64,000 bases of DNA from the IMG/VR virus record IMGVR_UViG_3300038465_000091, positions 124,001-188,000 of that record. One strand, 5' to 3'. The position numbers and the translations under genes were made by a program. This document shows positions 4,395 to 12,731 of the stretch, piece after piece. Numbering within the stretch: position 1 is the stretch's first letter; the number at the start of each line of letters is the position of its first letter. The notes under the pieces were generated by a model that saw nothing but the letters and a program-made list of their open reading frames with translations, had not been told where the DNA came from and did no database searches.

Positions 4395-5033
4395 ATGACA
4401 AGAAATTTACTGATTACTGCACCGCCGTTCAAAGTGGAAGCATCAATGAAACAACTGGGTTCCAACTTACGTACAGCACGAATTCGACGCGAACTGACGA
4501 TAAAGCAGGTCGCTGAAAGTATAGGGACAGGACCACGCGCCGTCATGGATGCCGAAAAAGGAAAATCCACCACGGGATTAGTTGTTTACACCGCACTTCT
4601 TTGGAAGTATCTACTATTGGATAAAATGCACGAATTAGCCGATCCCCTTCGAGATGAAATCGGGCTTATCTGTGCCTCTAAGCGGGAACCAAAGCGTGCA
4701 ACACGTGCACGTGGAGTTGAAGAGGTGGGTGTCCCGAGCGTGTATTTTATAGGCGACACAAAGCGAGGCATTGTTAAAATTGGAAAATCCAATAAGCCCG
4801 TCAACCGTTTTGAAAGTCTTCAAGCGGCCAATGCGGGGCCGTTGCAACTATTGGCTGAGCTACCCTTTGAAACGGATCATGCCGCTTGGACCGCCGAAAG
4901 CGAACTGCACGCCAAATACAAATACCTCAATACCCACGGTGAGTGGTTTCGATTGGATTCGAGCCTGAACGAGGAAATTCTGGGTATTCGAGCGCGGAGT
5001 TTAAGGAGAGCAGATTTTGTAAGGCCCGAGTAG
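4395..5033 (+). CDS. XRE-type HTH fused to a T5orf172/MUG113-like GIY-YIG nuclease domain
   Basis: N-terminal LRTARIRRELTIKQVAESIG HTH; C-terminal VYFIG...VKIGKS..P..R...LQ......LQLL...E..LH......HGEWF. Its TAG stop lies inside T2. Confidence 0.75.
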   Translation: MTRNLLITAPPFKVEASMKQLGSNLRTARIRRELTIKQVAESIGTGPRAVMDAEKGKSTTGLVVYTALLWKYLLLDKMHELADPLRDEIGLICASKREPKRATRARGVEEVGVPSVYFIGDTKRGIVKIGKSNKPVNRFESLQAANAGPLQLLAELPFETDHAAWTAESELHAKYKYLNTHGEWFRLDSSLNEEILGIRARSLRRADFVRPE

Positions 5034-5114
5034 CTCAGTGTTAGAGCGCCTGTGCAACGCCCGCAAGGGCTACGCCACAGGAGGTCGGTGGTTCGATTCC
5101 ATCCTCGGGTACCA
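5024..5114 (+). tRNA. tRNA-like RNA T2 with a 21-nt hairpin-containing insert in place of the anticodon loop
   Basis: Acceptor GCCCGAG/CTCGGGT-A-CCA with normal D and T arms; stem CCTGTG/CACAGG encloses CAAC-GCCC-GCAA-GGGC-TACGC. Confidence 0.8.
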
Positions 5115-5157
5115 AGTTTGTATGGCGTAGAAGACGAATGTCTTTTATAAAATACAC

Positions 5158-5207
5158 GGGCGGTAGAGCAGCGCAAGCTGGGTGCCGCAAGGCATCACCG
5201 CCCACCA
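5158..5207 (+). ncRNA. 50-nt CCA-ended tRNA minihelix-like RNA B
   Basis: Perfect 7-bp GGGCGGT/ACCGCCC + ACCA; GGTGCC-GCAA-GGCATC stem at the T-arm position; small GC-GCAA-GC hairpin. Confidence 0.65.
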
Positions 5208-5212
5208 AGTTT

Positions 5213-5361
5213 GGGGAGTTCGCTAGGCGAAAACTTAGTAGGTGATATCGCCGAACGGTCAGTAACCGATAGGTGTGAGGCCAGCGGCGTAGTCGCCTTT
5301 AGCGAGGCTTGGCTGAAAAGCGACGAGACTGCGAGGGGTTCGAATCCTCTACTCCCCACCA
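5213..5361 (+). ncRNA. 149-nt tRNA-like RNA C with an expanded central domain
   Basis: Acceptor GGGGAGT/ACTCCCC-A-CCA; T arm AGGGG-TTCGAAT-CCTCT; internal stems CGGT/ACCG and GTCGC/GCGAC; no 7-nt anticodon loop found. Confidence 0.7.
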
Positions 5362-5384
5362 ATTTTTGTGGTAGAATACATTAT

Positions 5385-5460
5385 GCGCCCGTAGCTTAGC
5401 GGTTAAAAGCAGTCGTCTCTAAAACGATGATCGTCGGTTCGAATCCGACTGGGCGCACCA
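5385..5460 (+). tRNA. Amber suppressor tRNA (anticodon CTA)
   Basis: Canonical 76-nt cloverleaf: GCGCCCG/TGGGCGC-A-CCA; anticodon arm GTCGT-CT-CTA-AA-ACGAT (CTA at 5419-5421); T arm GTCGG-TTCGAAT-CCGAC. Confidence 0.85.
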
Positions 5461-5463
5461 AAT

Positions 5464-5543
5464 GGGCGAGTAGCTCAGTGAAAGAGCGGCTTCCGTTCTA
5501 GAACGGAAGAGGGTCGGTGGTTTAAGTCCATCCTCGCCCACCA
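5464..5543 (+). tRNA. tRNA-like RNA T3 with an extended palindromic anticodon arm
   Basis: Acceptor GGGCGAG/CTCGCCC-A-CCA; the anticodon arm is the perfect 20-nt palindrome CTTCCGTTCTAGAACGGAAG; T loop TTTAAGT. Confidence 0.75.
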
Positions 5544-5622
5544 ATTTCCCCAAACCTCAGTATTAGGTAAGAGCGACCCTAACGGGCGTGTATCAATTTT
5601 CAAGAAACTGAGGAAACGTTCC

Positions 5623-6201
5623 ATGAAAATCCTAAGCTGTGCCCAAGGCTGTCTTAATGGCCTCGACAGACTTGCTCTCGCCTTTGGCTATCTAGCCGAA
5701 CCACCAACCAACAACTCAATTCAAAGCCAGACTGTTTATGAAGTTCATCGCCTCTCCTGTGATGAGTGTGATTCAATTGAACGTAACGTGGGGGGCAACT
5801 GTGAACGCTGCGAAGAAGGTAAAATCCTTGTTCGTCAAGCAGATAACTCGGCTAAGAAAGATCGAGTCAAATATCCGCACTCCGACGAACCTTCAGTGCG
5901 CGGCGAAGTCTGTCAATACGTACTTTTCAATCCGCAAGATTTCTACTACTATCTGTACAACTATGGCAAAGGCTTCTTAAATCATTTTGATCGGGAGACT
6001 CAACAAAAACTTGTTCGTCGGGGCGTCGTCGGATACTTGTGGGGAGCGACCGTGCTGCTGGATCGTGGTGTTCCTCGGGGGTACATCTGCCTCTCACCGG
6101 ACATCCGCGAGAAAGCCCTAACCTCGAAGCAGTCGATCCTGATTGACGGCGGCTTCATAGAACTGAAAAGCATGAAATATACGCTTGAAGATTATGCCTA
6201 A
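5623..6201 (+). CDS. Cys-rich N-terminus fused to a fragment paralogous to the major capsid protein
   Basis: LFNPQD...FDRETQQKLVRRGVVGYLWGATVLLDRGVPRGYICLSPD aligns by eye with FFNPRD...IDRETQRKLLKTGVMGYLWGATLLQSRKVGYGCIYILAD in 46489..47448. Confidence 0.8.
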   Translation: MKILSCAQGCLNGLDRLALAFGYLAEPPTNNSIQSQTVYEVHRLSCDECDSIERNVGGNCERCEEGKILVRQADNSAKKDRVKYPHSDEPSVRGEVCQYVLFNPQDFYYYLYNYGKGFLNHFDRETQQKLVRRGVVGYLWGATVLLDRGVPRGYICLSPDIREKALTSKQSILIDGGFIELKSMKYTLEDYA

Positions 6202-6363
6202 GAAGCCGACATTCGGACAGCAGATGGAAGCGATGCTCGTGCTGGGCTGCGTGGTCTGGCTCGTCATCGGGATCGCCAGTGACGTTTTGAATTTCATCAT
6301 GCGTCACTGGACGATTTTCTCGCCTCTTTCCATTCTCCTTGATTTGGTGGTATATTAAACGAG

Positions 6364-6621
6364 ATGGCAAAAATCAATAAGAAGACCAAGACCTGCGGTA
6401 GCACCACCTGCGTCGGCTGCCTGCCGCCGAAGAAGTTCGTATTCAAGATTGAGGGGAGCTTTGAGCTTCCAGCTTTCTGGACTGCGGACGCCGCCGAAGT
6501 GATACTGACAAAGGCTCTCGATCAGGGGTTGAACCTCATCGTCGAGGGGCGTTGCAGTAATAGCATCGAATACGCCGCTTACGTTTTCGAGGACAAAGAT
6601 GCCGACTCCAGCTTCCGTTGA
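6364..6621 (+). CDS. Hypothetical protein
   Basis: 85-aa ORF; ATG 7 nt after a TATATT box, possibly leaderless. Confidence 0.6.
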   Translation: MAKINKKTKTCGSTTCVGCLPPKKFVFKIEGSFELPAFWTADAAEVILTKALDQGLNLIVEGRCSNSIEYAAYVFEDKDADSSFR

Positions 6622-6713
6622 GATAATGCAGTACGCATAGTCCAAAATTCCTATCGATTCTGATCCATTTTTGGGTATAATAGTCTTTCAGGCTCTTCTA
6701 TAGGGGATACCTT

Positions 6714-7109
6714 ATGCATGGAACTGGCGATGTCTTAGGCGATCTGCTCAAGATCGCGGCAATGAACAAGGCGCAGATCGAGAAGCTCCTTGAACATTGG
6801 CAGATGGTGCAGCAAAAGAACCCCCCATCATCTGGGGAATGGCAAGACGCCTCAAAGCGAATCCACGAATTGGCCGAAATTCAACGACTCGTCACCGATG
6901 CGCTCAAGAACCCTTTTGGGAAGCCCGACTACAAGTTCGTCAACCTCGAAGAGGTCTCCGCTCTTTTCAAGCGTCAGATCGAGCGGCTGGGTTGCACCGA
7001 TGTCAAAATAGCGGCCACTTTGAATCACGACGCTATTGACATCGAAGCTCGCTTTACACCCCCGCCATCCCCAATTGTTATCAGTTTCACGGTTGAACCG
7101 AAGGAGTAA
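6714..7109 (+). CDS. Hypothetical protein
   Basis: 131-aa ORF downstream of a GGTATAAT box at ~6675. Confidence 0.65.
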   Translation: MHGTGDVLGDLLKIAAMNKAQIEKLLEHWQMVQQKNPPSSGEWQDASKRIHELAEIQRLVTDALKNPFGKPDYKFVNLEEVSALFKRQIERLGCTDVKIAATLNHDAIDIEARFTPPPSPIVISFTVEPKE

Positions 7110-7112
7110 CCC

Positions 7113-7325
7113 TTGGTTGAACACCACCACGAACGTTGCCACAGTTGCCATAAGCCGTTCGATCATGAATTGCTGGATTTCTTGTCCTGCGAATTGAATG
7201 AGTGCTACCGCTGCACTATGATCGACGAAAAAGACGCCTTCCGCCGTCTGCGGGAGTTGCGGCGTCGGATAATCGTCGGCAACCTGATGGATAGCGTGCC
7301 GATGGCGACGAAAGCGATCCAATGA
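7113..7325 (+). CDS. Small Cys/His-rich hypothetical protein
   Basis: AAGGAG RBS, TTG start; CxxC...CxxxxCxxC. Confidence 0.55.
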   Translation: MVEHHHERCHSCHKPFDHELLDFLSCELNECYRCTMIDEKDAFRRLRELRRRIIVGNLMDSVPMATKAIQ

Positions 7326-7615
7326 AACCCGATTGGACTCAAATCACCTTCGGCCCGCGTGCTCGCTGGGAACGCCGCGATGGGGCGATTGTGAGATACG
7401 ATGAGTCATCGCCATATCCCAACCCAGCCGTGTCCTCGGCAAAGATGTTCACGGCATGGGAGCCCGATCCTTCCGAGCGGGCGTTATCGATGGAGCGAGG
7501 CCACTGGCGAGTAGCTCAGGACGGGCACAGATTCAAGTTTTCGTTTCCTCGGCGATGGAAGACGGCAGAAGCAGCGATGCGGGCGGTGAACAAAGAATTC
7601 CCCTTTCAAAAATAA
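7322..7615 (+). CDS. Hypothetical protein
   Basis: ATGA overlap; 97 aa. Confidence 0.65.
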   Translation: MKPDWTQITFGPRARWERRDGAIVRYDESSPYPNPAVSSAKMFTAWEPDPSERALSMERGHWRVAQDGHRFKFSFPRRWKTAEAAMRAVNKEFPFQK

Positions 7616-7649
7616 TTTTCAAATTTCTATCGAAAATCTCGACTTCCAT

Positions 7650-7657
7650 GGTATTAT
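7650..7657 (+). promoter_or_regulatory. Extended -10 promoter of the tRNA operon (probably leaderless transcript)
   Basis: TG-G-TATTAT ends at 7657; the leader ATG is 7 nt downstream at 7665 with no SD sequence. Confidence 0.6.
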
Positions 7658-7664
7658 AGTAGAC

Positions 7665-7754
7665 ATGAAGCAGACACTCCAAACTCGAACTACAACGCAA
7701 CAAATTACAATTACGTGCGTGCGGGTCGGCGTGTCTGGTACTCAGGGTGAGTAA
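7665..7754 (+). CDS. Attenuator leader peptide MKQTLQTRTTTQQITITCVRVGVSGTQGE
   Basis: Translated by hand; codons 3-17 contain 7 Thr, 4 Gln and 2 Ile, matching the downstream tRNA species. Confidence 0.8.
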   Translation: MKQTLQTRTTTQQITITCVRVGVSGTQGE

Positions 7755-7785
7755 CCCCTAGAAAAATCAGAGACTTCCGAGCCGC
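7721..7785 (+). promoter_or_regulatory. Putative antiterminator helix
   Basis: GCGGGTCGG (7721-7729) pairs 8/9 with CCGAGCCGC (7777-7785), and GTGTCTGGT (7731-7739) pairs 8/9 with 7766-7774; this would sequester the 5' strand of the terminator. Confidence 0.7.
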
Positions 7786-7807
7786 CCACGGGCGGCTTTT
7801 GTATTTT
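7780..7807 (+). terminator. Intrinsic terminator (attenuator) immediately before the first tRNA
   Basis: AGCCGCC-CACG-GGCGGCT followed by TTTGTATTTT. Confidence 0.8.
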
Positions 7808-7883
7808 GGCGGGTAGCTCAACTGGCTAGAGCACTGAACTGATAATTCAGAGGTTGGGGGTTCAAGTCCCTCTCCGCCAACCA
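7807..7883 (+). tRNA. trnI: tRNA-Ile(GAT)
   Basis: Cloverleaf; anticodon arm CTGAA-CT-GAT-AA-TTCAG; encoded CCA. Confidence 0.9.
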
Positions 7884-7902
7884 AATTTTAGAGGAGGTAG
7901 TC

Positions 7903-8040
7903 ATGGCTGAGACCTTGGAACAAGAGGATTACTCGACGTGGACTTCGTGCCAGATGTACGGGCACAATTACGTGACTGATGAAGATCAGCCGAACTATCA
8001 CTTCTGTACCGACTGTGACGAAGCTTACTTTGACGAGTGA
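7903..8040 (+). CDS. Small Zn-finger-like protein (45 aa) within the tRNA array
   Basis: GAGGAGG RBS; MAETLEQEDYSTWTSCQMYGHNY...HFCTDCDEAYFDE. Confidence 0.6.
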   Translation: MAETLEQEDYSTWTSCQMYGHNYVTDEDQPNYHFCTDCDEAYFDE

Positions 8041-8050
8041 GTTTCGTTGT

Positions 8051-8124
8051 GGACCCGTCTTCCAATGGCAGGATCGGCGACCGATTATCGCTCAATGGTG
8101 GTTCGAATCCATCTGGGTCTACCA
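8051..8124 (+). tRNA. Atypical tRNA-Ile(GAT) (C33, U37)
   Basis: GGACCCG/TGGGTCT-A-CCA; anticodon arm GGCGA-CC-GAT-TA-TCGCT; T loop TTCGAAT. Confidence 0.65.
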
Positions 8125-8132
8125 AGTTCAAT

Positions 8133-8354
8133 GTGGCATATCGTACCCATACAGGGGCCGATTAGGGGAGTATAAGCCGCCTTATGGGTACAACGGACGA
8201 GCGACCATGCGAGGCGTGCGGAGTCAAGGCGGGTGGGAACCTGCGGATGCATGAGAAGGATTGTGCGTTGATCGCGAGTTATTGTGAAAGGTTTCCCGGG
8301 GGCAAGAACTCGCCGCAGTGGGAACGTAAAGGCCCTCGGATGAATGCGAAACAC
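8133..8354 (+). ncRNA. Putative structured RNA (~220 nt) inside the tRNA array, class unknown
   Basis: Stems GTACCCATA/TATGGGTAC, GCGGGT-GGGA-ACCTGC and GCGAGTT/AACTCGC; flanked by tRNAs; no RBS-led ORF. Confidence 0.45.
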
Positions 8355-8368
8355 TAAAATTTAGAAAT

Positions 8369-8450
8369 GCTAGCGTGGCACAGTGGCGACTGCAATGGTT
8401 CCGTAAACCATCATACAACACCGGGGGTTCGAGTCCCTTCGCTAGCTCCA
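8369..8450 (+). tRNA. trnT: tRNA-Thr(CGT), with C33 and an enlarged variable loop
   Basis: GCTAGCG/CGCTAGC-T-CCA; ATGGT-TC-CGT-AA-ACCAT. Confidence 0.8.
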
Positions 8451-8455
8451 GATTT

Positions 8456-8531
8456 GCAGACGTAACACAATTGGCAGTGTACTTTCTTGGTAAGAAAGAG
8501 GTTGTGGGTTCGACTCCCATCGTCTGCTCCA
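8456..8531 (+). tRNA. trnT: tRNA-Thr(GGT)
   Basis: GCAGACG/CGTCTGC-T-CCA; CTTTC-TT-GGT-AA-GAAAG. Confidence 0.9.
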
Positions 8532-8547
8532 TTTTTAGGAGAACAGC

Positions 8548-8844
8548 ATGTACAACTGTGAGATGTGCAACACGTCGTTCGAGGAAAAGGCGGACTTTCT
8601 CGCCCATCCTCATATCATCCAGAAGAAGCTACCAGTCGGTAGGGTGGAAGTGATGCACAGTTGCGGACACGTGGAAGTAGTCCGCAGTTTCGACGACCCG
8701 ATGTATTCGGAAGAGCGAATCGCAAAGCTCGGGAAGACGAAGGAACAGTTCGTAAAGGAACAGATTGAATGGTACGCGAGCGTGCCCTGTCCCGGCTGCT
8801 ACGTTCCTCGACACGGATATGCGATGAACGGGCCGTGTTGCTAG
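8548..8844 (+). CDS. Zn-finger hypothetical protein
   Basis: AGGAGA RBS; CxxC...H...H, HSCGH and CPGC motifs. Confidence 0.7.
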   Translation: MYNCEMCNTSFEEKADFLAHPHIIQKKLPVGRVEVMHSCGHVEVVRSFDDPMYSEERIAKLGKTKEQFVKEQIEWYASVPCPGCYVPRHGYAMNGPCC

Positions 8845-8886
8845 GCGGGTAAGCGCCTAAGAAAAGTTTAGGCGGAAAGACGCCTA
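8842..8886. repeat. Tandem pair of TAGGCG-N6-CGCCTA hairpins
   Basis: 8842-8859 and 8869-8886. Confidence 0.7.
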
Positions 8887-8895
8887 CAAAAATTT

Positions 8896-8980
8896 GCTAC
8901 TGTGGCTCAGCGGCGACAGCACCGCACCTGTAATGCGGCGGGGAAACCCCACGGGAGTTCGAGTCTCCCCGGTAGCTCCA
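8896..8980 (+). tRNA. trnT: tRNA-Thr(TGT), with C33 and a GGGG-AAA-CCCC variable arm
   Basis: GCTACTG/CGGTAGC-T-CCA; CCGCA-CC-TGT-AA-TGCGG. Confidence 0.8.
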
Positions 8981-9065
8981 AGTTCGATTGATTCGTATGC
9001 CAGAAAGTGACTTATACGTCGCTTTTCAGCTACGGATCGATCTAAAGTGACGTAGAAATCACATT

Positions 9066-9139
9066 TGGGAGATCGTTCAACGGCAGGACGACAGACTTTG
9101 AATCTGTCTATCTAGGTTCGAATCCTAGTCTCCCAGCCA
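9066..9139 (+). tRNA. trnQ: tRNA-Gln(TTG)
   Basis: TGGGAGA/TCTCCCA-G-CCA; ACAGA-CT-TTG-AA-TCTGT. Confidence 0.9.
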
Positions 9140-9151
9140 GTATTAGCCCTT

Positions 9152-9484
9152 ATGGGCTACAAAAACAAAACGGATCAACTAGCAAGCCAACGACGTTGGT
9201 ACAGCAACCATAAAGTTGAAGAGGTCGAACGAGTTCTTCAACGCCGACGTGATTTATACGACTGGCTCCGCAAATTAAAGAGAACTCTTAAGTGCAATCG
9301 GTGTCCCGAGAGTTTTTGGGTATGTTTGGATTTTCATCATACCGATCCAACTGAGAAGGACATGAGTGTGGCGCAGGCTGTTCGCAACGGTTGGAGCAAG
9401 AAACGCATCTTGGCTGAAATTGCCAAATGCGAGGTTCTTTGCAAGAACTGCCACGCGAAAGAGCACGCCAAAATTGGGAAGTAG
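9152..9484 (+). CDS. HNH homing endonuclease between two tRNA-Gln genes
   Basis: CNRC...LDFHH.DP..K......E..KC.VLC.NCH..EH pattern; its TAG stop lies in the following tRNA. Confidence 0.85.
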   Translation: MGYKNKTDQLASQRRWYSNHKVEEVERVLQRRRDLYDWLRKLKRTLKCNRCPESFWVCLDFHHTDPTEKDMSVAQAVRNGWSKKRILAEIAKCEVLCKNCHAKEHAKIGK

Positions 9485-9551
9485 CTCAATTGCGTAGAGC
9501 AACTGCCTTTGAAGCAGAAGGTTGGGGGTTCGAGTCCCTCCTTCCCAGCCA
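9475..9551 (+). tRNA. trnQ: tRNA-Gln(TTG), second divergent copy
   Basis: TGGGAAG/CTTCCCA-G-CCA; CTGC-CT-TTG-AA-GCAG. Confidence 0.85.
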
Positions 9552-9558
9552 AATTCTC

Positions 9559-10002
9559 ATGACTACCCATTTCATGGGTATGGACATCCTTCACAAATTC
9601 ATTCTGGGCGGTGAAATCTACCTCGCCGCCGCTTCAGGACTCGTTGTCGTTAGTGCGTTGTTCCGTAGCTGGCATCACCTTCGCGGCACATCGAACACCA
9701 TGCCAATGAACCCCGCGAACATCGCTATCGCTATGGCGAAGTCCAATAACGAAAGCCGCATCCACCGCTGGCTAGACGCGTTCGATATTTTCTTGAATGT
9801 CAGTTTTATGAACGGGTCCAACGATGAAACGATGTCCGCGCACGCATGGCGAGCATCCGTCGAAGGTCATCTGTGGGGCAAGGCGATGAACTGGTGGTTA
9901 AGTGGCTTCCAGCCGAACCACGGGTATCAAGCCGCTTGCGGCGATCTCCAGCGGGCGCTGAATCGCATGGCTGTTGAGAAGAAGGCGCTCGGCCTTCAGT
10001 AG
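9559..10002 (+). CDS. Hypothetical membrane protein
   Basis: ATG at 9559 in track ORF 9427..10002; one hydrophobic segment. Confidence 0.6.
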   Translation: MTTHFMGMDILHKFILGGEIYLAAASGLVVVSALFRSWHHLRGTSNTMPMNPANIAIAMAKSNNESRIHRWLDAFDIFLNVSFMNGSNDETMSAHAWRASVEGHLWGKAMNWWLSGFQPNHGYQAACGDLQRALNRMAVEKKALGLQ

Positions 10003-10178
10003 TTACGCCGTGCTGGTGCCTGTTCTTTGGTCCTTGCCTGTAAAAATTCCGCAGCTTTAATCAGCAATGCGGGGTCATCCGAGAAGCACCCCATACCCTT
10101 TGTTGTGCCAAACCAGTGCAATTTTGAGCATTTTGTGATAGACTTTTGAATGTGACTGACACTACCATTTTCAGTCAT
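9996..10178 (-). pseudogene. Possible remnant of an endonuclease VII-type gene
   Basis: C-terminal KGMGCFSDDPALLIKAAEFL resembles the G.G.F.D....L..A..YL tail of Endonuclease_7; the CxxC/HDH motifs are absent. Confidence 0.35.
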
Positions 10179-10244
10179 AAATCAAGTTTCAAAATTCCTA
10201 GCCAAAACGCAACCCCTTCGGTATAATGGGGACGAGGAGAATAC

Positions 10245-10607
10245 ATGGGAACAACTTGTCCATTGAATGATCTCGGGTTACATTTTTGTCAATGTAAGGA
10301 TGAGCCAGTTCGGTCGATCAACTCGAAAGAAGAGTTTACCCGCGCACTGACTCGCCTTGTCCTCACGCTAGCCGCTAAACTCGATCTGACGCCAACCGAT
10401 CTATACGGTGTGGTTGTTCGACTTAGTGACATCGATTCCGAGATCGTCACGAAATTCACCGAAGCACATGCGGGGCAGACTTTTGGTACCGCCGTTGAAG
10501 CGGGGCAGCGTAGCATGGAATTTCGCCGCGAATACCTCACCGCCCTTCTGGAAAATGAATCAAATATCTCAAACGAGGAACAGAACAATGAACTCACTAC
10601 TGACTAA
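10245..10607 (+). CDS. Hypothetical protein
   Basis: GGTATAAT box and GAGGAG RBS upstream. Confidence 0.65.
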   Translation: MGTTCPLNDLGLHFCQCKDEPVRSINSKEEFTRALTRLVLTLAAKLDLTPTDLYGVVVRLSDIDSEIVTKFTEAHAGQTFGTAVEAGQRSMEFRREYLTALLENESNISNEEQNNELTTD

Positions 10608-11460: not shown

Positions 11461-12731
11461 TGCCTATGAAACACTATCTAACGCCCGAGTTCCTGATGGT
11501 CATAACGGTGTTGATGCCCGTGATCTACTTGGTCTTCAGGGCGATCTACATGGCTTTCTCCGAGACCATTCACCCGAAGAAGGCGCAGGTCCAGAAAGAC
11601 GTGAACCACACGCCCTCCGTGGCCGTGGTCATTCCGTGCTACAACGAAGGGAAGGGCGTCTACGACTGCATCAAGCATATCTGGGAGAGCGACTACCCGA
11701 AAGACATGCTCAAGATTTACCCGCAGGACGACGGCTCAGTGGACGACAGTTGGGAGTGGATGCTCAAGGCGGCGAAGGATTTTGATCGGGTGTACCCGGA
11801 AAGAAACGGCGGCGACGTACCGAAAAACAAAGGCAAGACGGACACGTACCTCAGGGCGATGGAACGTGCGGAGCCTTCCGAGATTCTCGTGAACGTGGAT
11901 TCCGACACTCTCGTCGGCACGGACACCATCAGAAAGATGTTGCAATGTTTCGCGGACCAACGTATCGGCGTCGTCGGCGCACCAGCGGGCATCATCAACG
12001 CGAACGACAGCATATTGACCGCGTTGCAGGCGTACAACTGGACATTCTACAACCAATTCCTCGTCAACCTTGAGAGCACCTACAGGGCCAATCAGGTGTG
12101 CGGCGGGTGGAGCCTCGCGGTCAGGCGGCACATCCTCGAAGAGATAGCCCCCGAAATTTTGGGTCGGCACTGGTTCGGCTGCTCCACCAAGGACGGGGAA
12201 GATCGTTTCATCACGCATCTGGCGCTTCTCCGAGGCTGGGACAGCTACGTAGTGCAGAACACGTGCAGCAAGACCCACGCAATGGAGAACTGGACGCGGT
12301 ATTGGGGACAGCAAGTACGATGGCGCAGAAGCACTTACCGAAGCTTCTGGTGGGTGCTGCGGAAACTGTGGTACCACACGGGGCGCATGAACCCTGCGGC
12401 TCTGTGGGCTATTCTCTCGCAGGGCTTCATGTTCTTCGCGCTCGTAATAATCATCGTCCACTTCGCCCTTACGATGCCCTTTGCCCTCCTGAGCCCTGTC
12501 AAGGTAGCTATTTTTCTTGGCATTTCTTCTGCCTTGATGATACTATGGGACAGGAAGATGAACTGGCAAAAACTCAGGAATCCGTTCAAAACCATATTGG
12601 TGATCCCGTGGGCCATCACCAGCATGTTCTATCTCGCCATCGTATGCCTGCTCTCGCTGGATCAGGATGCATGGGGAAACAGGATTAAAACAACGCCAAC
12701 ACCACCGACTTCGAAGGAGTTATCACAATGA
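11460..12731 (+). CDS. Processive GT2 polysaccharide synthase (hyaluronan synthase / NodC-like)
   Basis: IPCYNE, DDGS, VDSD, GEDR and QQVRW (QxxRW) motifs; N- and C-terminal TM helices. Confidence 0.85.
   Translation: MPMKHYLTPEFLMVITVLMPVIYLVFRAIYMAFSETIHPKKAQVQKDVNHTPSVAVVIPCYNEGKGVYDCIKHIWESDYPKDMLKIYPQDDGSVDDSWEWMLKAAKDFDRVYPERNGGDVPKNKGKTDTYLRAMERAEPSEILVNVDSDTLVGTDTIRKMLQCFADQRIGVVGAPAGIINANDSILTALQAYNWTFYNQFLVNLESTYRANQVCGGWSLAVRRHILEEIAPEILGRHWFGCSTKDGEDRFITHLALLRGWDSYVVQNTCSKTHAMENWTRYWGQQVRWRRSTYRSFWWVLRKLWYHTGRMNPAALWAILSQGFMFFALVIIIVHFALTMPFALLSPVKVAIFLGISSALMILWDRKMNWQKLRNPFKTILVIPWAITSMFYLAIVCLLSLDQDAWGNRIKTTPTPPTSKELSQ

What the first reader, a model, noticed from the sequence alone, without database searches (positions are those of the whole stretch)
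7650..9551. Phage tRNA operon controlled by a ribosome-stalling attenuator whose leader codons match its own tRNAs
Seen in sequence: a -10 box (7652-7657) and a 29-codon ORF at 7665-7754 (MKQTLQTRTTTQQITITCVRVGVSGTQGE). Codons 3-17 are 13/15 Thr (ACA, ACT, ACG), Gln (CAA, CAG) or Ile (ATT). A GC-rich terminator follows (7780-7807), with its U-tract abutting the first tRNA. The leader's 3' half (7721-7739) can pair with 7766-7785 and sequester the terminator's 5' strand. The seven tRNAs downstream are exactly Ile(GAT) x2, Thr(CGT, GGT, TGT) and Gln(TTG) x2, which read those codons. Established knowledge: this is the architecture of thr/ilv/his leader-peptide attenuators, which normally control amino-acid biosynthesis or synthetase genes. 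Inference: the phage uses a ribosome to sense shortage of charged or intact Thr/Gln/Ile tRNA (starvation, or cleavage by host anticodon nucleases) and transcribes replacement tRNAs only on demand. I know of no described attenuator controlling a phage tRNA array.
Basis: partly seen in the sequence, partly recalled or inferred. Interest (0 to 1): 0.95.

Follow-up and report, generated by a model that had tools for sequence, protein, structure and literature searches.

The report
Leader-peptide attenuator controlling phage tRNA genes
A huge phage places a tiny gene full of Thr, Gln and Ile codons plus a stop-or-go RNA switch in front of its Thr, Gln and Ile tRNA genes, and related phages use the same device with other codons in front of other tRNA sets, so these phages appear to make each group of tRNAs only when ribosomes run short of them.

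Summary

**In the window**
- An extended -10 promoter lies at 7649-7657.
- A 29-codon ORF (7665-7754) follows, and 13 of its codons 3-17 are Thr, Gln or Ile.
- An intrinsic terminator (7779-7806) abuts the first of seven Ile, Thr and Gln tRNAs.

**In related contigs**
- I found 19 such units in about 16 uncultured large-phage contigs.
- They fall into six codon classes:
  - T/Q/I precedes Ile, Thr and Gln tRNAs.
  - L/Y precedes Tyr and Leu tRNAs.
  - S plus TTA precedes Ser tRNAs and Leu(TAA).
  - P/M precedes Pro and Met tRNAs.
  - N/M/I/V/K/R precedes those six tRNA kinds.
  - A nine-amino-acid leader precedes exactly those nine tRNA kinds.
- Each leader is most enriched for codons read by its own array.
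- In every unit the last 8-10 codons pair with the terminator's 5' strand, and the stop codon sits at or near the hairpin apex. The two arms co-vary.
- Substitutions between homologues keep the codon class.

No Rfam leader or T-box family matched, and eight literature searches found no precedent.

**Best reading:** ribosome-mediated transcription attenuation that gives feedback control of tRNA supply. Translation and regulation are untested, leaders mostly lack a Shine-Dalgarno motif, and some related arrays have no leader.

The parts
7609..7620 (+). A/T-rich UP-like element (AAAATAATTTTC) upstream of the leader promoter. It overlaps the stop codon of the upstream 97-aa gene.
   Evidence: It occurs only once in the window. 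The same element lies upstream of the L006, L013 and L048 leaders. Its function as an UP element is inferred.
7630..7657 (+). Sigma-70-type promoter: -35 TCGAAA, 16-nt spacer, extended -10 TGgTATTAT.
   Evidence: Consensus scan. The sequence is identical in L013. No other + strand promoter-like site occurs between it and 10199.
7665..7754 (+). Leader ORF of 29 codons ending in TAA. It has no SD motif and is probably leaderless, because the ATG lies 7 nt after the -10 box.
   Evidence: The ORF is conserved in nine other contigs, with length changes in whole codons only.
7671..7715 (+). Sensor run, codons 3-17: 13 Thr/Gln/Ile codons (ACA ACT ACG CAA CAG ATT), plus CGA and CTC.
   Evidence: A ribosome mask with the A site at codons 6-16 leaves the antiterminator intact; from codon 17 on the mask destroys it.
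7667..7737 (+). Anti-antiterminator (1:2) hairpin. The start of the ORF, including CAGACAC at 7671-7677, pairs with 7716-7737, including GTGTCTG at 7731-7737.
   Evidence: This is the full-length MFE without a ribosome. It is present in W, L013, L006, L017, L027 and L029 but absent from several other units.
7715..7789 (+). Antiterminator hairpin. The 5' arm is codons 18-26. The apex holds the TAA stop (7752-7754). The 3' arm includes CAGAGAC (7768-7774) and the terminator's 5' strand (7781-7789).
   Evidence: The energy is -29.6 kcal/mol, z -3.5. The same design occurs in all 19 units.
7779..7806 (+). Intrinsic terminator: an 8-bp G+C-rich stem, a 4-nt loop and the tract TTTTGTATTTT, ending one base before the tRNA.
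   Evidence: The GCCGCC..GGCGGC-TTT motif occurs in the first 49 fetched loci (L001-L049) only inside leader units.
7807..7883 (+). tRNA-Ile (GAT)
   Evidence: 67 bits.
7903..8040 (+). 45-aa Cys-rich ORF with a strong SD, embedded in the array.
   Evidence: It is conserved in relatives (L009, L017, L022, L027).
8051..8124 (+). tRNA-Ile (GAT)
   Evidence: 37 bits.
8184..8357 (+). 57-aa ORF embedded in the array.
   Evidence: A homologue is present in L009.
8369..8450 (+). tRNA-Thr (CGT)
8456..8531 (+). tRNA-Thr (GGT)
8548..8844 (+). 98-aa Cys-rich ORF embedded in the array.
8896..8980 (+). tRNA-Thr (TGT)
9066..9139 (+). tRNA-Gln (TTG)
9152..9484 (+). 110-aa ORF with HNH-like Cys/His motifs, lying between the two Gln tRNAs. 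It has no Pfam hit.
   Evidence: The HNH resemblance comes from reading the sequence and was not tested.
9475..9551 (+). tRNA-Gln (TTG)

Best explanation
This is a ribosome-mediated (leader-peptide) transcription attenuator that places a phage tRNA sub-array under feedback control by the tRNAs it encodes.

Proposed mechanism:
1. A strong promoter starts a transcript at or next to the AUG of a 29-codon ORF.
2. Codons 3-17 are almost all Thr, Gln or Ile codons.
3. If the matching charged tRNAs are plentiful, the ribosome runs to the TAA stop, which sits at the apex of a long hairpin. In doing so it unzips the hairpin's 5' arm (codons 18-26).
4. That frees the 3' arm, which contains the terminator's 5' strand. 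The terminator (7779-7806) forms and transcription stops one base before tRNA-Ile.
5. If any of these tRNAs is scarce, uncharged or damaged, the ribosome stalls in the sensor run, upstream of the hairpin. The antiterminator (7715-7789) persists and RNA polymerase reads through into Ile, Ile, Thr, Thr, Thr, Gln, Gln and the small ORFs among them.
6. RNase P and other processing would then release the tRNAs.

Shown here: the anatomy, its conservation, the co-variation of the hairpin arms, and the match between leader codons and downstream tRNAs in six classes.

Inferred: translation of the ORF, the sign and size of the response, and the natural trigger.
For: (1) Anatomy in the window.

(2) Homologous T/Q/I leaders in nine other contigs:
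- They keep the ATG, the TAA stop and a length of 24-31 codons, with indels in whole codons only.
- The cognate-codon fraction in the sensor zone is 0.53-0.67, against a background of 0.16.
- W versus L022: 17 of 42 nt differ in codons 3-16, yet 8 of the 10 changed codons stay cognate (P<1e-4).

(3) Co-variation of leader codons with tRNA identity:
- Tyr/Leu leaders: L048, L049, L170, L171.
- Ser leader using all six Ser codons plus TTA, ahead of four Ser tRNAs and Leu(TAA): L051.
- Pro/Met leaders: L170, L171.
- L177 unit A with N/M/I/V/K/R codons, and L177 unit B with nine amino acids that equal the nine tRNA identities of its sub-array.
- L006 and L048 lie on the same 332-kb contig, so one phage carries two specificities.
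- In the 18 x 6 matrix every leader scores highest on its own array, and the true assignment ranks first of 720.

(4) Structure:
- In all 19 units the ORF's last codons pair with the terminator's 5' strand, and the stop codon lies at or near the apex.
- Hairpin z-scores run from -1.4 to -6.6.
- Cognate arms average -26.5 kcal/mol against -17.7 for swapped arms. The cognate arm is the best partner in 12 of 19 units and in the top three in 18 of 19.

(5) Register: the predicted change from 'stall keeps the antiterminator' to 'ribosome melts the antiterminator' falls at codons 14-17. That is where the sensor run ends in most units.

(6) No other promoter-like site lies between the leader and the end of the array.
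Against: - Nothing here shows translation or regulated termination.
- Only 2 of 19 leaders have a GGAG/GAGG/AGGA motif, against 22 of 39 window genes. Initiation must therefore be leaderless or weak, and the host is unknown.
- At equilibrium a clear terminator-to-antiterminator switch is predicted only for the window's own unit. In the others the terminator stays favoured. From memory, this is also true of the E. coli trp attenuator, which works kinetically.
- The 1:2 anti-antiterminator is not conserved in all units.
- In L022, L049 and L051 most of the upper hairpin can coexist with the terminator. Only 4-7 basal pairs compete.
- L177 unit B has a poor T tract.
- The L009 group has the same Ile-Thr-Gln order without any leader. 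Other tRNA clusters in these phages also lack one.
- Making more tRNA would not relieve stalling caused by amino-acid starvation.
Confidence: 0.8

Rival explanations
1. This is an RNA-only switch. The alternative hairpins respond to something other than a translating ribosome, for example direct binding of tRNA as in a T-box, a protein or a small ligand. The ORF would then be incidental.
For: - The two mutually exclusive, co-varying structures are well supported without reference to the ORF.
- Most leaders lack an SD motif.
Against: - The ATG, the in-frame stop and whole-codon indels are conserved across very divergent leaders.
- Substitutions preserve codon class in one frame only.
- The stop codon holds a fixed place at the hairpin apex in all classes.
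- There is no T-box or other Rfam hit at E<=1.
- A run of up to nine different codon types has no known RNA-only reader.
Confidence: 0.06
2. This is an independent small gene or small RNA. The promoter, ORF and terminator form a self-contained unit that always terminates and acts in trans as a peptide or as a ~140-nt RNA. The tRNAs would be transcribed by other means, such as a phage RNA polymerase or promoters the scan cannot see.
For: - The terminator is strong and is favoured at equilibrium in most units.
- Attenuator-derived RNAs and peptides with trans functions are known in Sinorhizobium (abstracts of PMC6614838 and PMC7298713).
- Large phages can use non-sigma-70 promoters, which would miss.
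Against: - It does not explain why codon content tracks the downstream tRNA set in six classes.
- It does not explain why a conserved hairpin sequesters the terminator's 5' strand.
- It does not explain why the unit always sits directly upstream of a tRNA array.
Confidence: 0.06
3. This is a ribosome-dependent attenuator that reports general translation capacity or infection stage, acting as a timer, rather than the supply of particular tRNAs.
For: - Any slowing of the ribosome in the ORF would favour read-through.
- The leaderless start and the conserved slow CGA codon fit a general sensor.
Against: A general sensor needs no class-specific codons. Yet each array has its own codon set, maintained under divergence.
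Confidence: 0.06
4. The match is a chance low-complexity ORF next to tRNAs.
For: A/C-rich DNA readily encodes Thr and Gln.
Against: - It is the top window of about 128,000.
- It is conserved in nine other contigs, and five other classes repeat the rule.
Confidence: 0.01

Closest known systems
E. coli thr operon attenuator (thrL leader, Rfam Thr_leader) and the other amino-acid operon leader-peptide attenuators (trp, his, leu, ilv, pheA)
   Same: - A short promoter-proximal ORF with a run of regulatory codons. From memory, thrL also mixes Thr and Ile codons.
- An intrinsic terminator before the regulated genes.
- An antiterminator that competes with the terminator and is melted by a ribosome reaching the stop codon.
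- A 1:2 hairpin in some units.
   Different: - The regulated genes are tRNAs, plus small embedded ORFs, not biosynthetic enzymes. The output therefore feeds back directly on the sensed molecule.
- No sequence or structure match to any Rfam leader family.
- The stop codon sits at the apex of the antiterminator.
- Many units look leaderless.
- The sensor can poll up to nine amino acids.
- The units are phage-encoded and form a modular paralogous family.
pheST (pheM leader) attenuator of E. coli
   Same: From memory, it is a leader-peptide attenuator that controls a component of the translation apparatus in response to charged tRNA.
   Different: It controls an aminoacyl-tRNA synthetase rather than tRNA genes, senses a single amino acid, and is bacterial.
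T-box riboswitches
   Same: They sense the status of a specific tRNA and choose between a terminator and an antiterminator upstream of genes for aminoacylation and amino-acid supply.
   Different: A T-box binds uncharged tRNA directly through one specifier codon and a conserved T-box sequence, with no ORF and no ribosome. No T-box hit was found here, and the element here has a conserved translated-looking ORF.
Phage tRNA arrays (T4, T5, large and huge phages)
   Same: They are clusters of tRNA genes interspersed with small ORFs and homing-endonuclease-like genes.
   Different: I know of no leader-peptide control described for them, and none turned up in eight full-text searches.

Membership tests
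Ribosome-mediated (leader-peptide) transcription attenuator | Short ORF immediately downstream of a promoter and upstream of the regulated genes | tested here: met
   ORF at 7665-7754 after the promoter at 7630-7657. The ORF is conserved in 19 units.
Ribosome-mediated (leader-peptide) transcription attenuator | Run of codons for the regulatory amino acid(s) inside the ORF | tested here: met
   13/15 Thr/Gln/Ile codons, the top of 128,000 windows. The codon class is preserved under divergence.
Ribosome-mediated (leader-peptide) transcription attenuator | Intrinsic terminator between the leader ORF and the regulated genes | tested here: met
   Stem at 7779-7798 plus a T tract. Present in all units, though the T tract is weak in L177 unit B.
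Ribosome-mediated (leader-peptide) transcription attenuator | Antiterminator that shares a strand with the terminator and overlaps the end of the ORF, so that ribosome position decides which structure forms | tested here: met
   Predicted in all 19 units. The arms co-vary. This is prediction only, with no structure probing.
Ribosome-mediated (leader-peptide) transcription attenuator | Anti-antiterminator or pause hairpin (1:2) that couples transcription to translation | tested here: inconclusive
   Predicted in W, L013, L006, L017, L027 and L029. Not predicted in L022, L048, L049 or L051.
Ribosome-mediated (leader-peptide) transcription attenuator | Leader is translated, and read-through rises when the cognate charged tRNA is limiting | not testable with these tools
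   No expression data are available. An SD motif is absent in 17 of 19 leaders, and a leaderless start is plausible.
Rfam amino-acid leader families (Thr_leader, Leu_leader, His_leader, Trp_leader and others) | Match to the family covariance model | tested here: not met
   Only tRNA, tmRNA and chance hits at E<=1 over the window at 4500-10500 and over five loci that carry T/Q/I, L/Y and S units.
T-box riboswitch | Match to the T-box model (specifier loop and conserved T-box antiterminator bulge) | tested here: not met
   No hit at E<=1.

The most novel reading that the evidence does not exclude
Large and huge phages carry a modular family of tRNA-supply homeostats. Each tRNA sub-array is preceded by a leader peptide that polls exactly the tRNAs it controls, from one to nine amino-acid identities. 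Transcription of each tRNA group is therefore set by how well ribosomes are currently decoding its codons. This would be the first case of tRNA gene transcription under feedback from decoding itself. It would also be a built-in sensor that replaces tRNAs lost to host shut-off or to anticodon-nuclease defences.
Probability: 0.7. Interest if true: 0.95.

Novelty: new variant of a known kind. Interest (0 to 1): 0.9.

Why it matters
Leader-peptide attenuation is a textbook mechanism. As far as I know, and as far as eight full-text searches show, it has been described only for amino-acid biosynthesis, transport and synthetase genes, never for tRNA genes and never in a phage tRNA array.

- **A closed loop.** Here the output (tRNA) is the molecule being sensed. 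The circuit would be a direct supply-and-demand loop for individual tRNA groups.
- **An answer to an open question.** It offers a testable account of how phages with dozens of tRNAs regulate them. It also suggests why their arrays are grouped by amino acid.
- **A link to defence.** It points to a sensor for tRNA-targeting host defences.
- **A possible tool.** The units are short and modular, and their codons are reprogrammed in nature. That makes them candidates for biosensors of tRNA status.
- **An annotation rule.** A short ORF whose composition mirrors the tRNAs downstream marks the start of a regulated tRNA operon.

Tried and rejected
- **INPHARED phages.** blastn found only tRNA-sized matches and no related isolate.
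- **Rfam at E<=1.** No leader, T-box or other cis-regulatory family matched.
- **RNAalifold on a MAFFT alignment of ten antiterminators.** It gave no structure because indels in the apical hairpin misalign the arms. I replaced it with per-sequence folds and an arm-swap test.
- **Equilibrium terminator probability under a ribosome mask.** It gives a clean switch only for the window's unit. I therefore also folded transcripts cut before the terminator's 3' strand.
- **Metagenome scan with the terminator motif.** 117 of the 120 stretches have no tRNA within 700 nt downstream. Of the three that do, only L051 belongs.
- **Structure-anchored scan of viral contigs.** Sixteen of 21 hits were chance. 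One (L029) was new.
- **L009-L012 group.** It has the same tRNA order but no leader.
- **Arg/suppressor cluster in the window and Lys/suppressor clusters in L006 and L013.** They follow protein genes directly, with no leader.
- **L176 60-aa Phe-rich ORF before tRNA-Phe.** It lacks the terminator and antiterminator design and is probably a membrane peptide.
- **L177 unit C.** It is an L/S/Y-rich ORF before Leu, Ser and Tyr tRNAs, but it runs into the first tRNA and has no clean terminator. I count it as suggestive only.
- **In-frame TAG recoding in the window.** I found no clear sign of it; TAG ends 12 of 63 long ORFs. My merge test was crude.
- **Walking along L170.** One look-up found no record.
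Full report
**What is in the window.**
- An A/T-rich element lies at 7609-7620.
- A sigma-70-type promoter has TCGAAA at 7630 and an extended -10, TGgTATTAT, at 7649-7657.
- A 29-codon ORF lies at 7665-7754. Its codons 3-17 comprise 13 Thr, Gln or Ile codons plus one CTC and one CGA.
- A G+C-rich terminator stem lies at 7779-7798, with a T tract ending at 7806.
- tRNA-Ile starts at 7807.
- ARAGORN and Rfam agree on Ile(GAT) x2, Thr(CGT), Thr(GGT), Thr(TGT) and Gln(TTG) x2 up to 9551. Small Cys-rich ORFs lie between them.

The window is phage-like. It encodes a helicase and a tail sheath, nearly all genes are on one strand, and it is part of a 223.5-kb IMG/VR contig.

**Is the codon run more than chance?** The 13/15 window is the single best of about 128,000 fifteen-codon windows in all six frames. 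The runner-up elsewhere in the window scores 11. Against the window's own codon usage, 12 of 14 cognate codons in positions 3-16 has a binomial tail of 2e-8.

**Structure in the window.**
- The MFE of 7660-7810 is a long hairpin that pairs 7714-7740 with 7766-7795. The centroid is a 5' hairpin (7669-7700 with 7716-7739) plus the terminator.
- With no ribosome, the transcript ending at the terminator stem folds as 1:2 plus terminator, with terminator probability 0.91.
- Masking a ribosome footprint with the A site at codons 6-13 drops that probability to about 0.
- With the A site at codon 14 or later, the probability returns to about 1.

This is the four-segment logic of classical attenuators.

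**Homologues.** No isolate phage is related. Anchoring on neighbouring proteins and on conserved DNA boxes recovered nine other T/Q/I leaders on different contigs of 48 to 463 kb: L013, L006, L017, L022, L027, L029, L173, L178 and L179.
- All start with ATG and end with TAA. They are 24-31 codons long and differ by whole-codon indels only.
- Eight of the nine are followed by Ile, Thr and Gln tRNAs, at 0-430 nt. In some a small ORF lies between the terminator and the first tRNA. The L029 locus is too short to show what follows its terminator.
- Sequence identity in the sensor run is low, but the cognate fraction stays at 0.53-0.67 against a background of 0.16.
- W and L022 differ at 17 of 42 nt in codons 3-16. 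Ten codons changed and eight of those are still cognate. Random substitution would leave 4.4 of 14 codons cognate (P<1e-4). Selection therefore acts on codon class in this frame, not on the peptide sequence.

**The co-variation test.** An ORF that recurs inside the arrays (DUF6915-like) led to other arrays in the same phage group.
- *Tyr/Leu class.* On the same 332-kb contig as L006, L048 has a nearly identical promoter. It is followed by a 25-codon leader rich in CTA, CTG, TTG, CTT and TAT, the same type of terminator, and then Tyr(GTA) x3 and Leu(CAG, GAG, TAG, CAA). L049, L170 and L171/L172 repeat this.
- *Ser class.* L051 has a window-like promoter. Its leader uses all six Ser codons plus one TTA, ahead of Ser(GCT, GGA, CGA, TGA) and Leu(TAA).
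- *Pro/Met class.* L170 and L171 also carry a leader with four Pro codons and three or four internal Met codons. It precedes Pro(TGG, CGG, GGG) and Met(CAT) and uses a different terminator sequence.
- *Two mixed classes.* A different 102-kb phage contig (L177) has 32 tRNAs in consecutive sub-arrays. Unit A's leader is built from Asn, Met, Val, Ile (including ATA), Lys and Arg codons. It precedes Asn, Met, Ile(TAT), Val, Ile, Lys x2 and Arg x4. Unit B's leader holds Asp, Cys, Pro, Thr, Gln, Ala, Gly, Trp and Glu codons. It precedes tRNAs for exactly those nine amino acids.

In an 18-leader by 6-array matrix every leader scores highest on its own array. With one representative per class, the true assignment ranks first of 720.

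**Structure across the family.**
- In all 19 units, the transcript cut before the terminator's 3' strand folds into one hairpin. Its 5' arm is the last 8-10 codons of the ORF and its 3' arm ends in the terminator's 5' strand. The stop codon lies in the apical loop or next to it.
- The middle and apical helices differ in sequence between units but stay complementary. For example, the middle helix reads UCGG/CCGA, GUUGAC/GUUAAC, GUGAGC/GUUCAC and GGCUUC/GAAGCC.
- Swapping arms between units costs about 9 kcal/mol on average. The cognate 3' arm is the best partner for 12 of 19 5' arms and in the top three for 18 of 19. Hairpin z-scores range from -1.4 to -6.6.
- The footprint model places the change from 'antiterminator survives' to 'antiterminator melted' at codons 14-17. 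The sensor run ends there in most units.

**Mechanism proposed.**
- With ample charged tRNA, the ribosome reaches the stop at the hairpin apex. The 5' arm is then inside the ribosome, the terminator forms, and transcription ends before the first tRNA.
- When a cognate tRNA is scarce, the ribosome waits in the sensor run. The antiterminator holds, and the array is transcribed and processed.
- The product relieves the stall, so the loop is negative feedback on the supply of each tRNA group.
- No other promoter-like site lies between the leader and the end of the array.
- The steps from 'ORF is translated' onward are inference.

**Weak points.**
- Only 2 of 19 leaders have an SD-like motif, against 22 of 39 window genes.
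- In W, L013, L017, L049 and L177 unit B the -10 box sits 6-10 nt before the ATG. That suggests leaderless mRNAs, but this is not shown and the host is unknown.
- At equilibrium most units still favour the terminator, so the device must work kinetically.
- The 1:2 hairpin is not universal.
- In a few units only the basal 4-7 pairs compete with the terminator.
- L177 unit B has a poor T tract.
- The L009 group and several other tRNA clusters have no leader.

**Comparison with known systems.** By design the unit works like the thr, his, trp and leu leader-peptide attenuators and the pheST attenuator.
- It matches no Rfam leader family or T-box.
- It differs in its target (tRNA genes), in its carrier (phages) and in placing the stop codon at the antiterminator apex.
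- Its starts often look leaderless, it is modular, and it can poll up to nine amino acids.
- Eight full-text searches found no report of an attenuator upstream of tRNA genes or phage tRNA arrays. That library does not cover all journals.

**Verdict.**
- This is a new variant of a known mechanism, with high interest.
- Confidence that the conserved unit exists and tracks tRNA identity is about 0.95.
- Confidence that it acts as a ribosome-mediated attenuator is about 0.8.

Noticed in passing
window 5024-5543: A second tRNA cluster without a leader: Arg(ACG), an amber-suppressor-type tRNA (anticodon CTA) and a tRNA that ARAGORN reads with a four-base anticodon CTAG. Relatives carry two or three CTA tRNAs (L006, L013, L017, L179). 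L176 10824-11369 encodes an RF1/PCRF-domain protein of only 181 aa. TAG still ends 12 of 63 long ORFs in the window, so I saw no clear recoding.
   Followed up: partly
window 4395-5033: A 212-aa protein with HTH and T5orf172/MUG113 domains. Its 3' end overlaps the start of tRNA-Arg by 10 nt.
   Followed up: no
L006 1703-1862; L006 1940-2060; L009 6621-6757; L013 5290-5440: tRNA-like genes with intact acceptor and T arms, interrupted by insertions of about 60-120 nt. They are intron-like or permuted, and ARAGORN missed them.
   Followed up: no
window 7903-8040, 8184-8357, 8548-8844, 9152-9484; L022 5522-5899: Small Cys-rich ORFs with strong SD motifs are conserved between the tRNAs. One looks HNH-like. 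A DUF6915-like 126-aa ORF recurs inside both T/Q/I and Tyr/Leu arrays. None has a known function.
   Followed up: partly
L180, L181, L182 (match at 10001-10240): DUF6915 homologues of 51-55% identity lie on chromosomal contigs of Terriglobales and Acidobacteriaceae MAGs, not next to tRNA arrays. This is a weak hint that Acidobacteriota are the hosts.
   Followed up: partly
L177 4700-13450: A 102-kb phage contig has 32 tRNAs in about 9 kb, split into consecutive sub-arrays, each with its own promoter and leader. A third candidate leader at 12644 is rich in Leu, Ser and Tyr codons and precedes Leu, Ser and Tyr tRNAs. It runs into the first tRNA and has no clean terminator.
   Followed up: partly
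window codon 8 of the leader (7686-7688), and the same position in relatives: An Arg CGA codon is kept at leader codon 8 in eight of the ten T/Q/I leaders. Three have a second Arg codon at position 14 (CGA in L013 and L006, CGT in L017). CGA is read only through inosine wobble by tRNA-Arg(ACG), which these phages encode outside this operon. It may be a built-in slow step or a further input.
   Followed up: no
L027 672-1001: A permuted tmRNA gene lies on a phage contig (Rfam tmRNA_permuted, 53.6 bits).
   Followed up: no
L172 / L176: The same Tyr/Leu and Pro/Met units lie on an 894-kb JGI contig and on a 97-kb ENA contig. The 894-kb record is either an exceptionally large phage genome or a chimeric assembly.
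   Followed up: no
L009 4160-4250: A promoter of the same type (A/T-rich element, TTGCAA, 16-nt spacer, TGgTATTAT) is followed by an 8-codon ORF and no tRNA. This promoter class is therefore not restricted to leader units.
   Followed up: no
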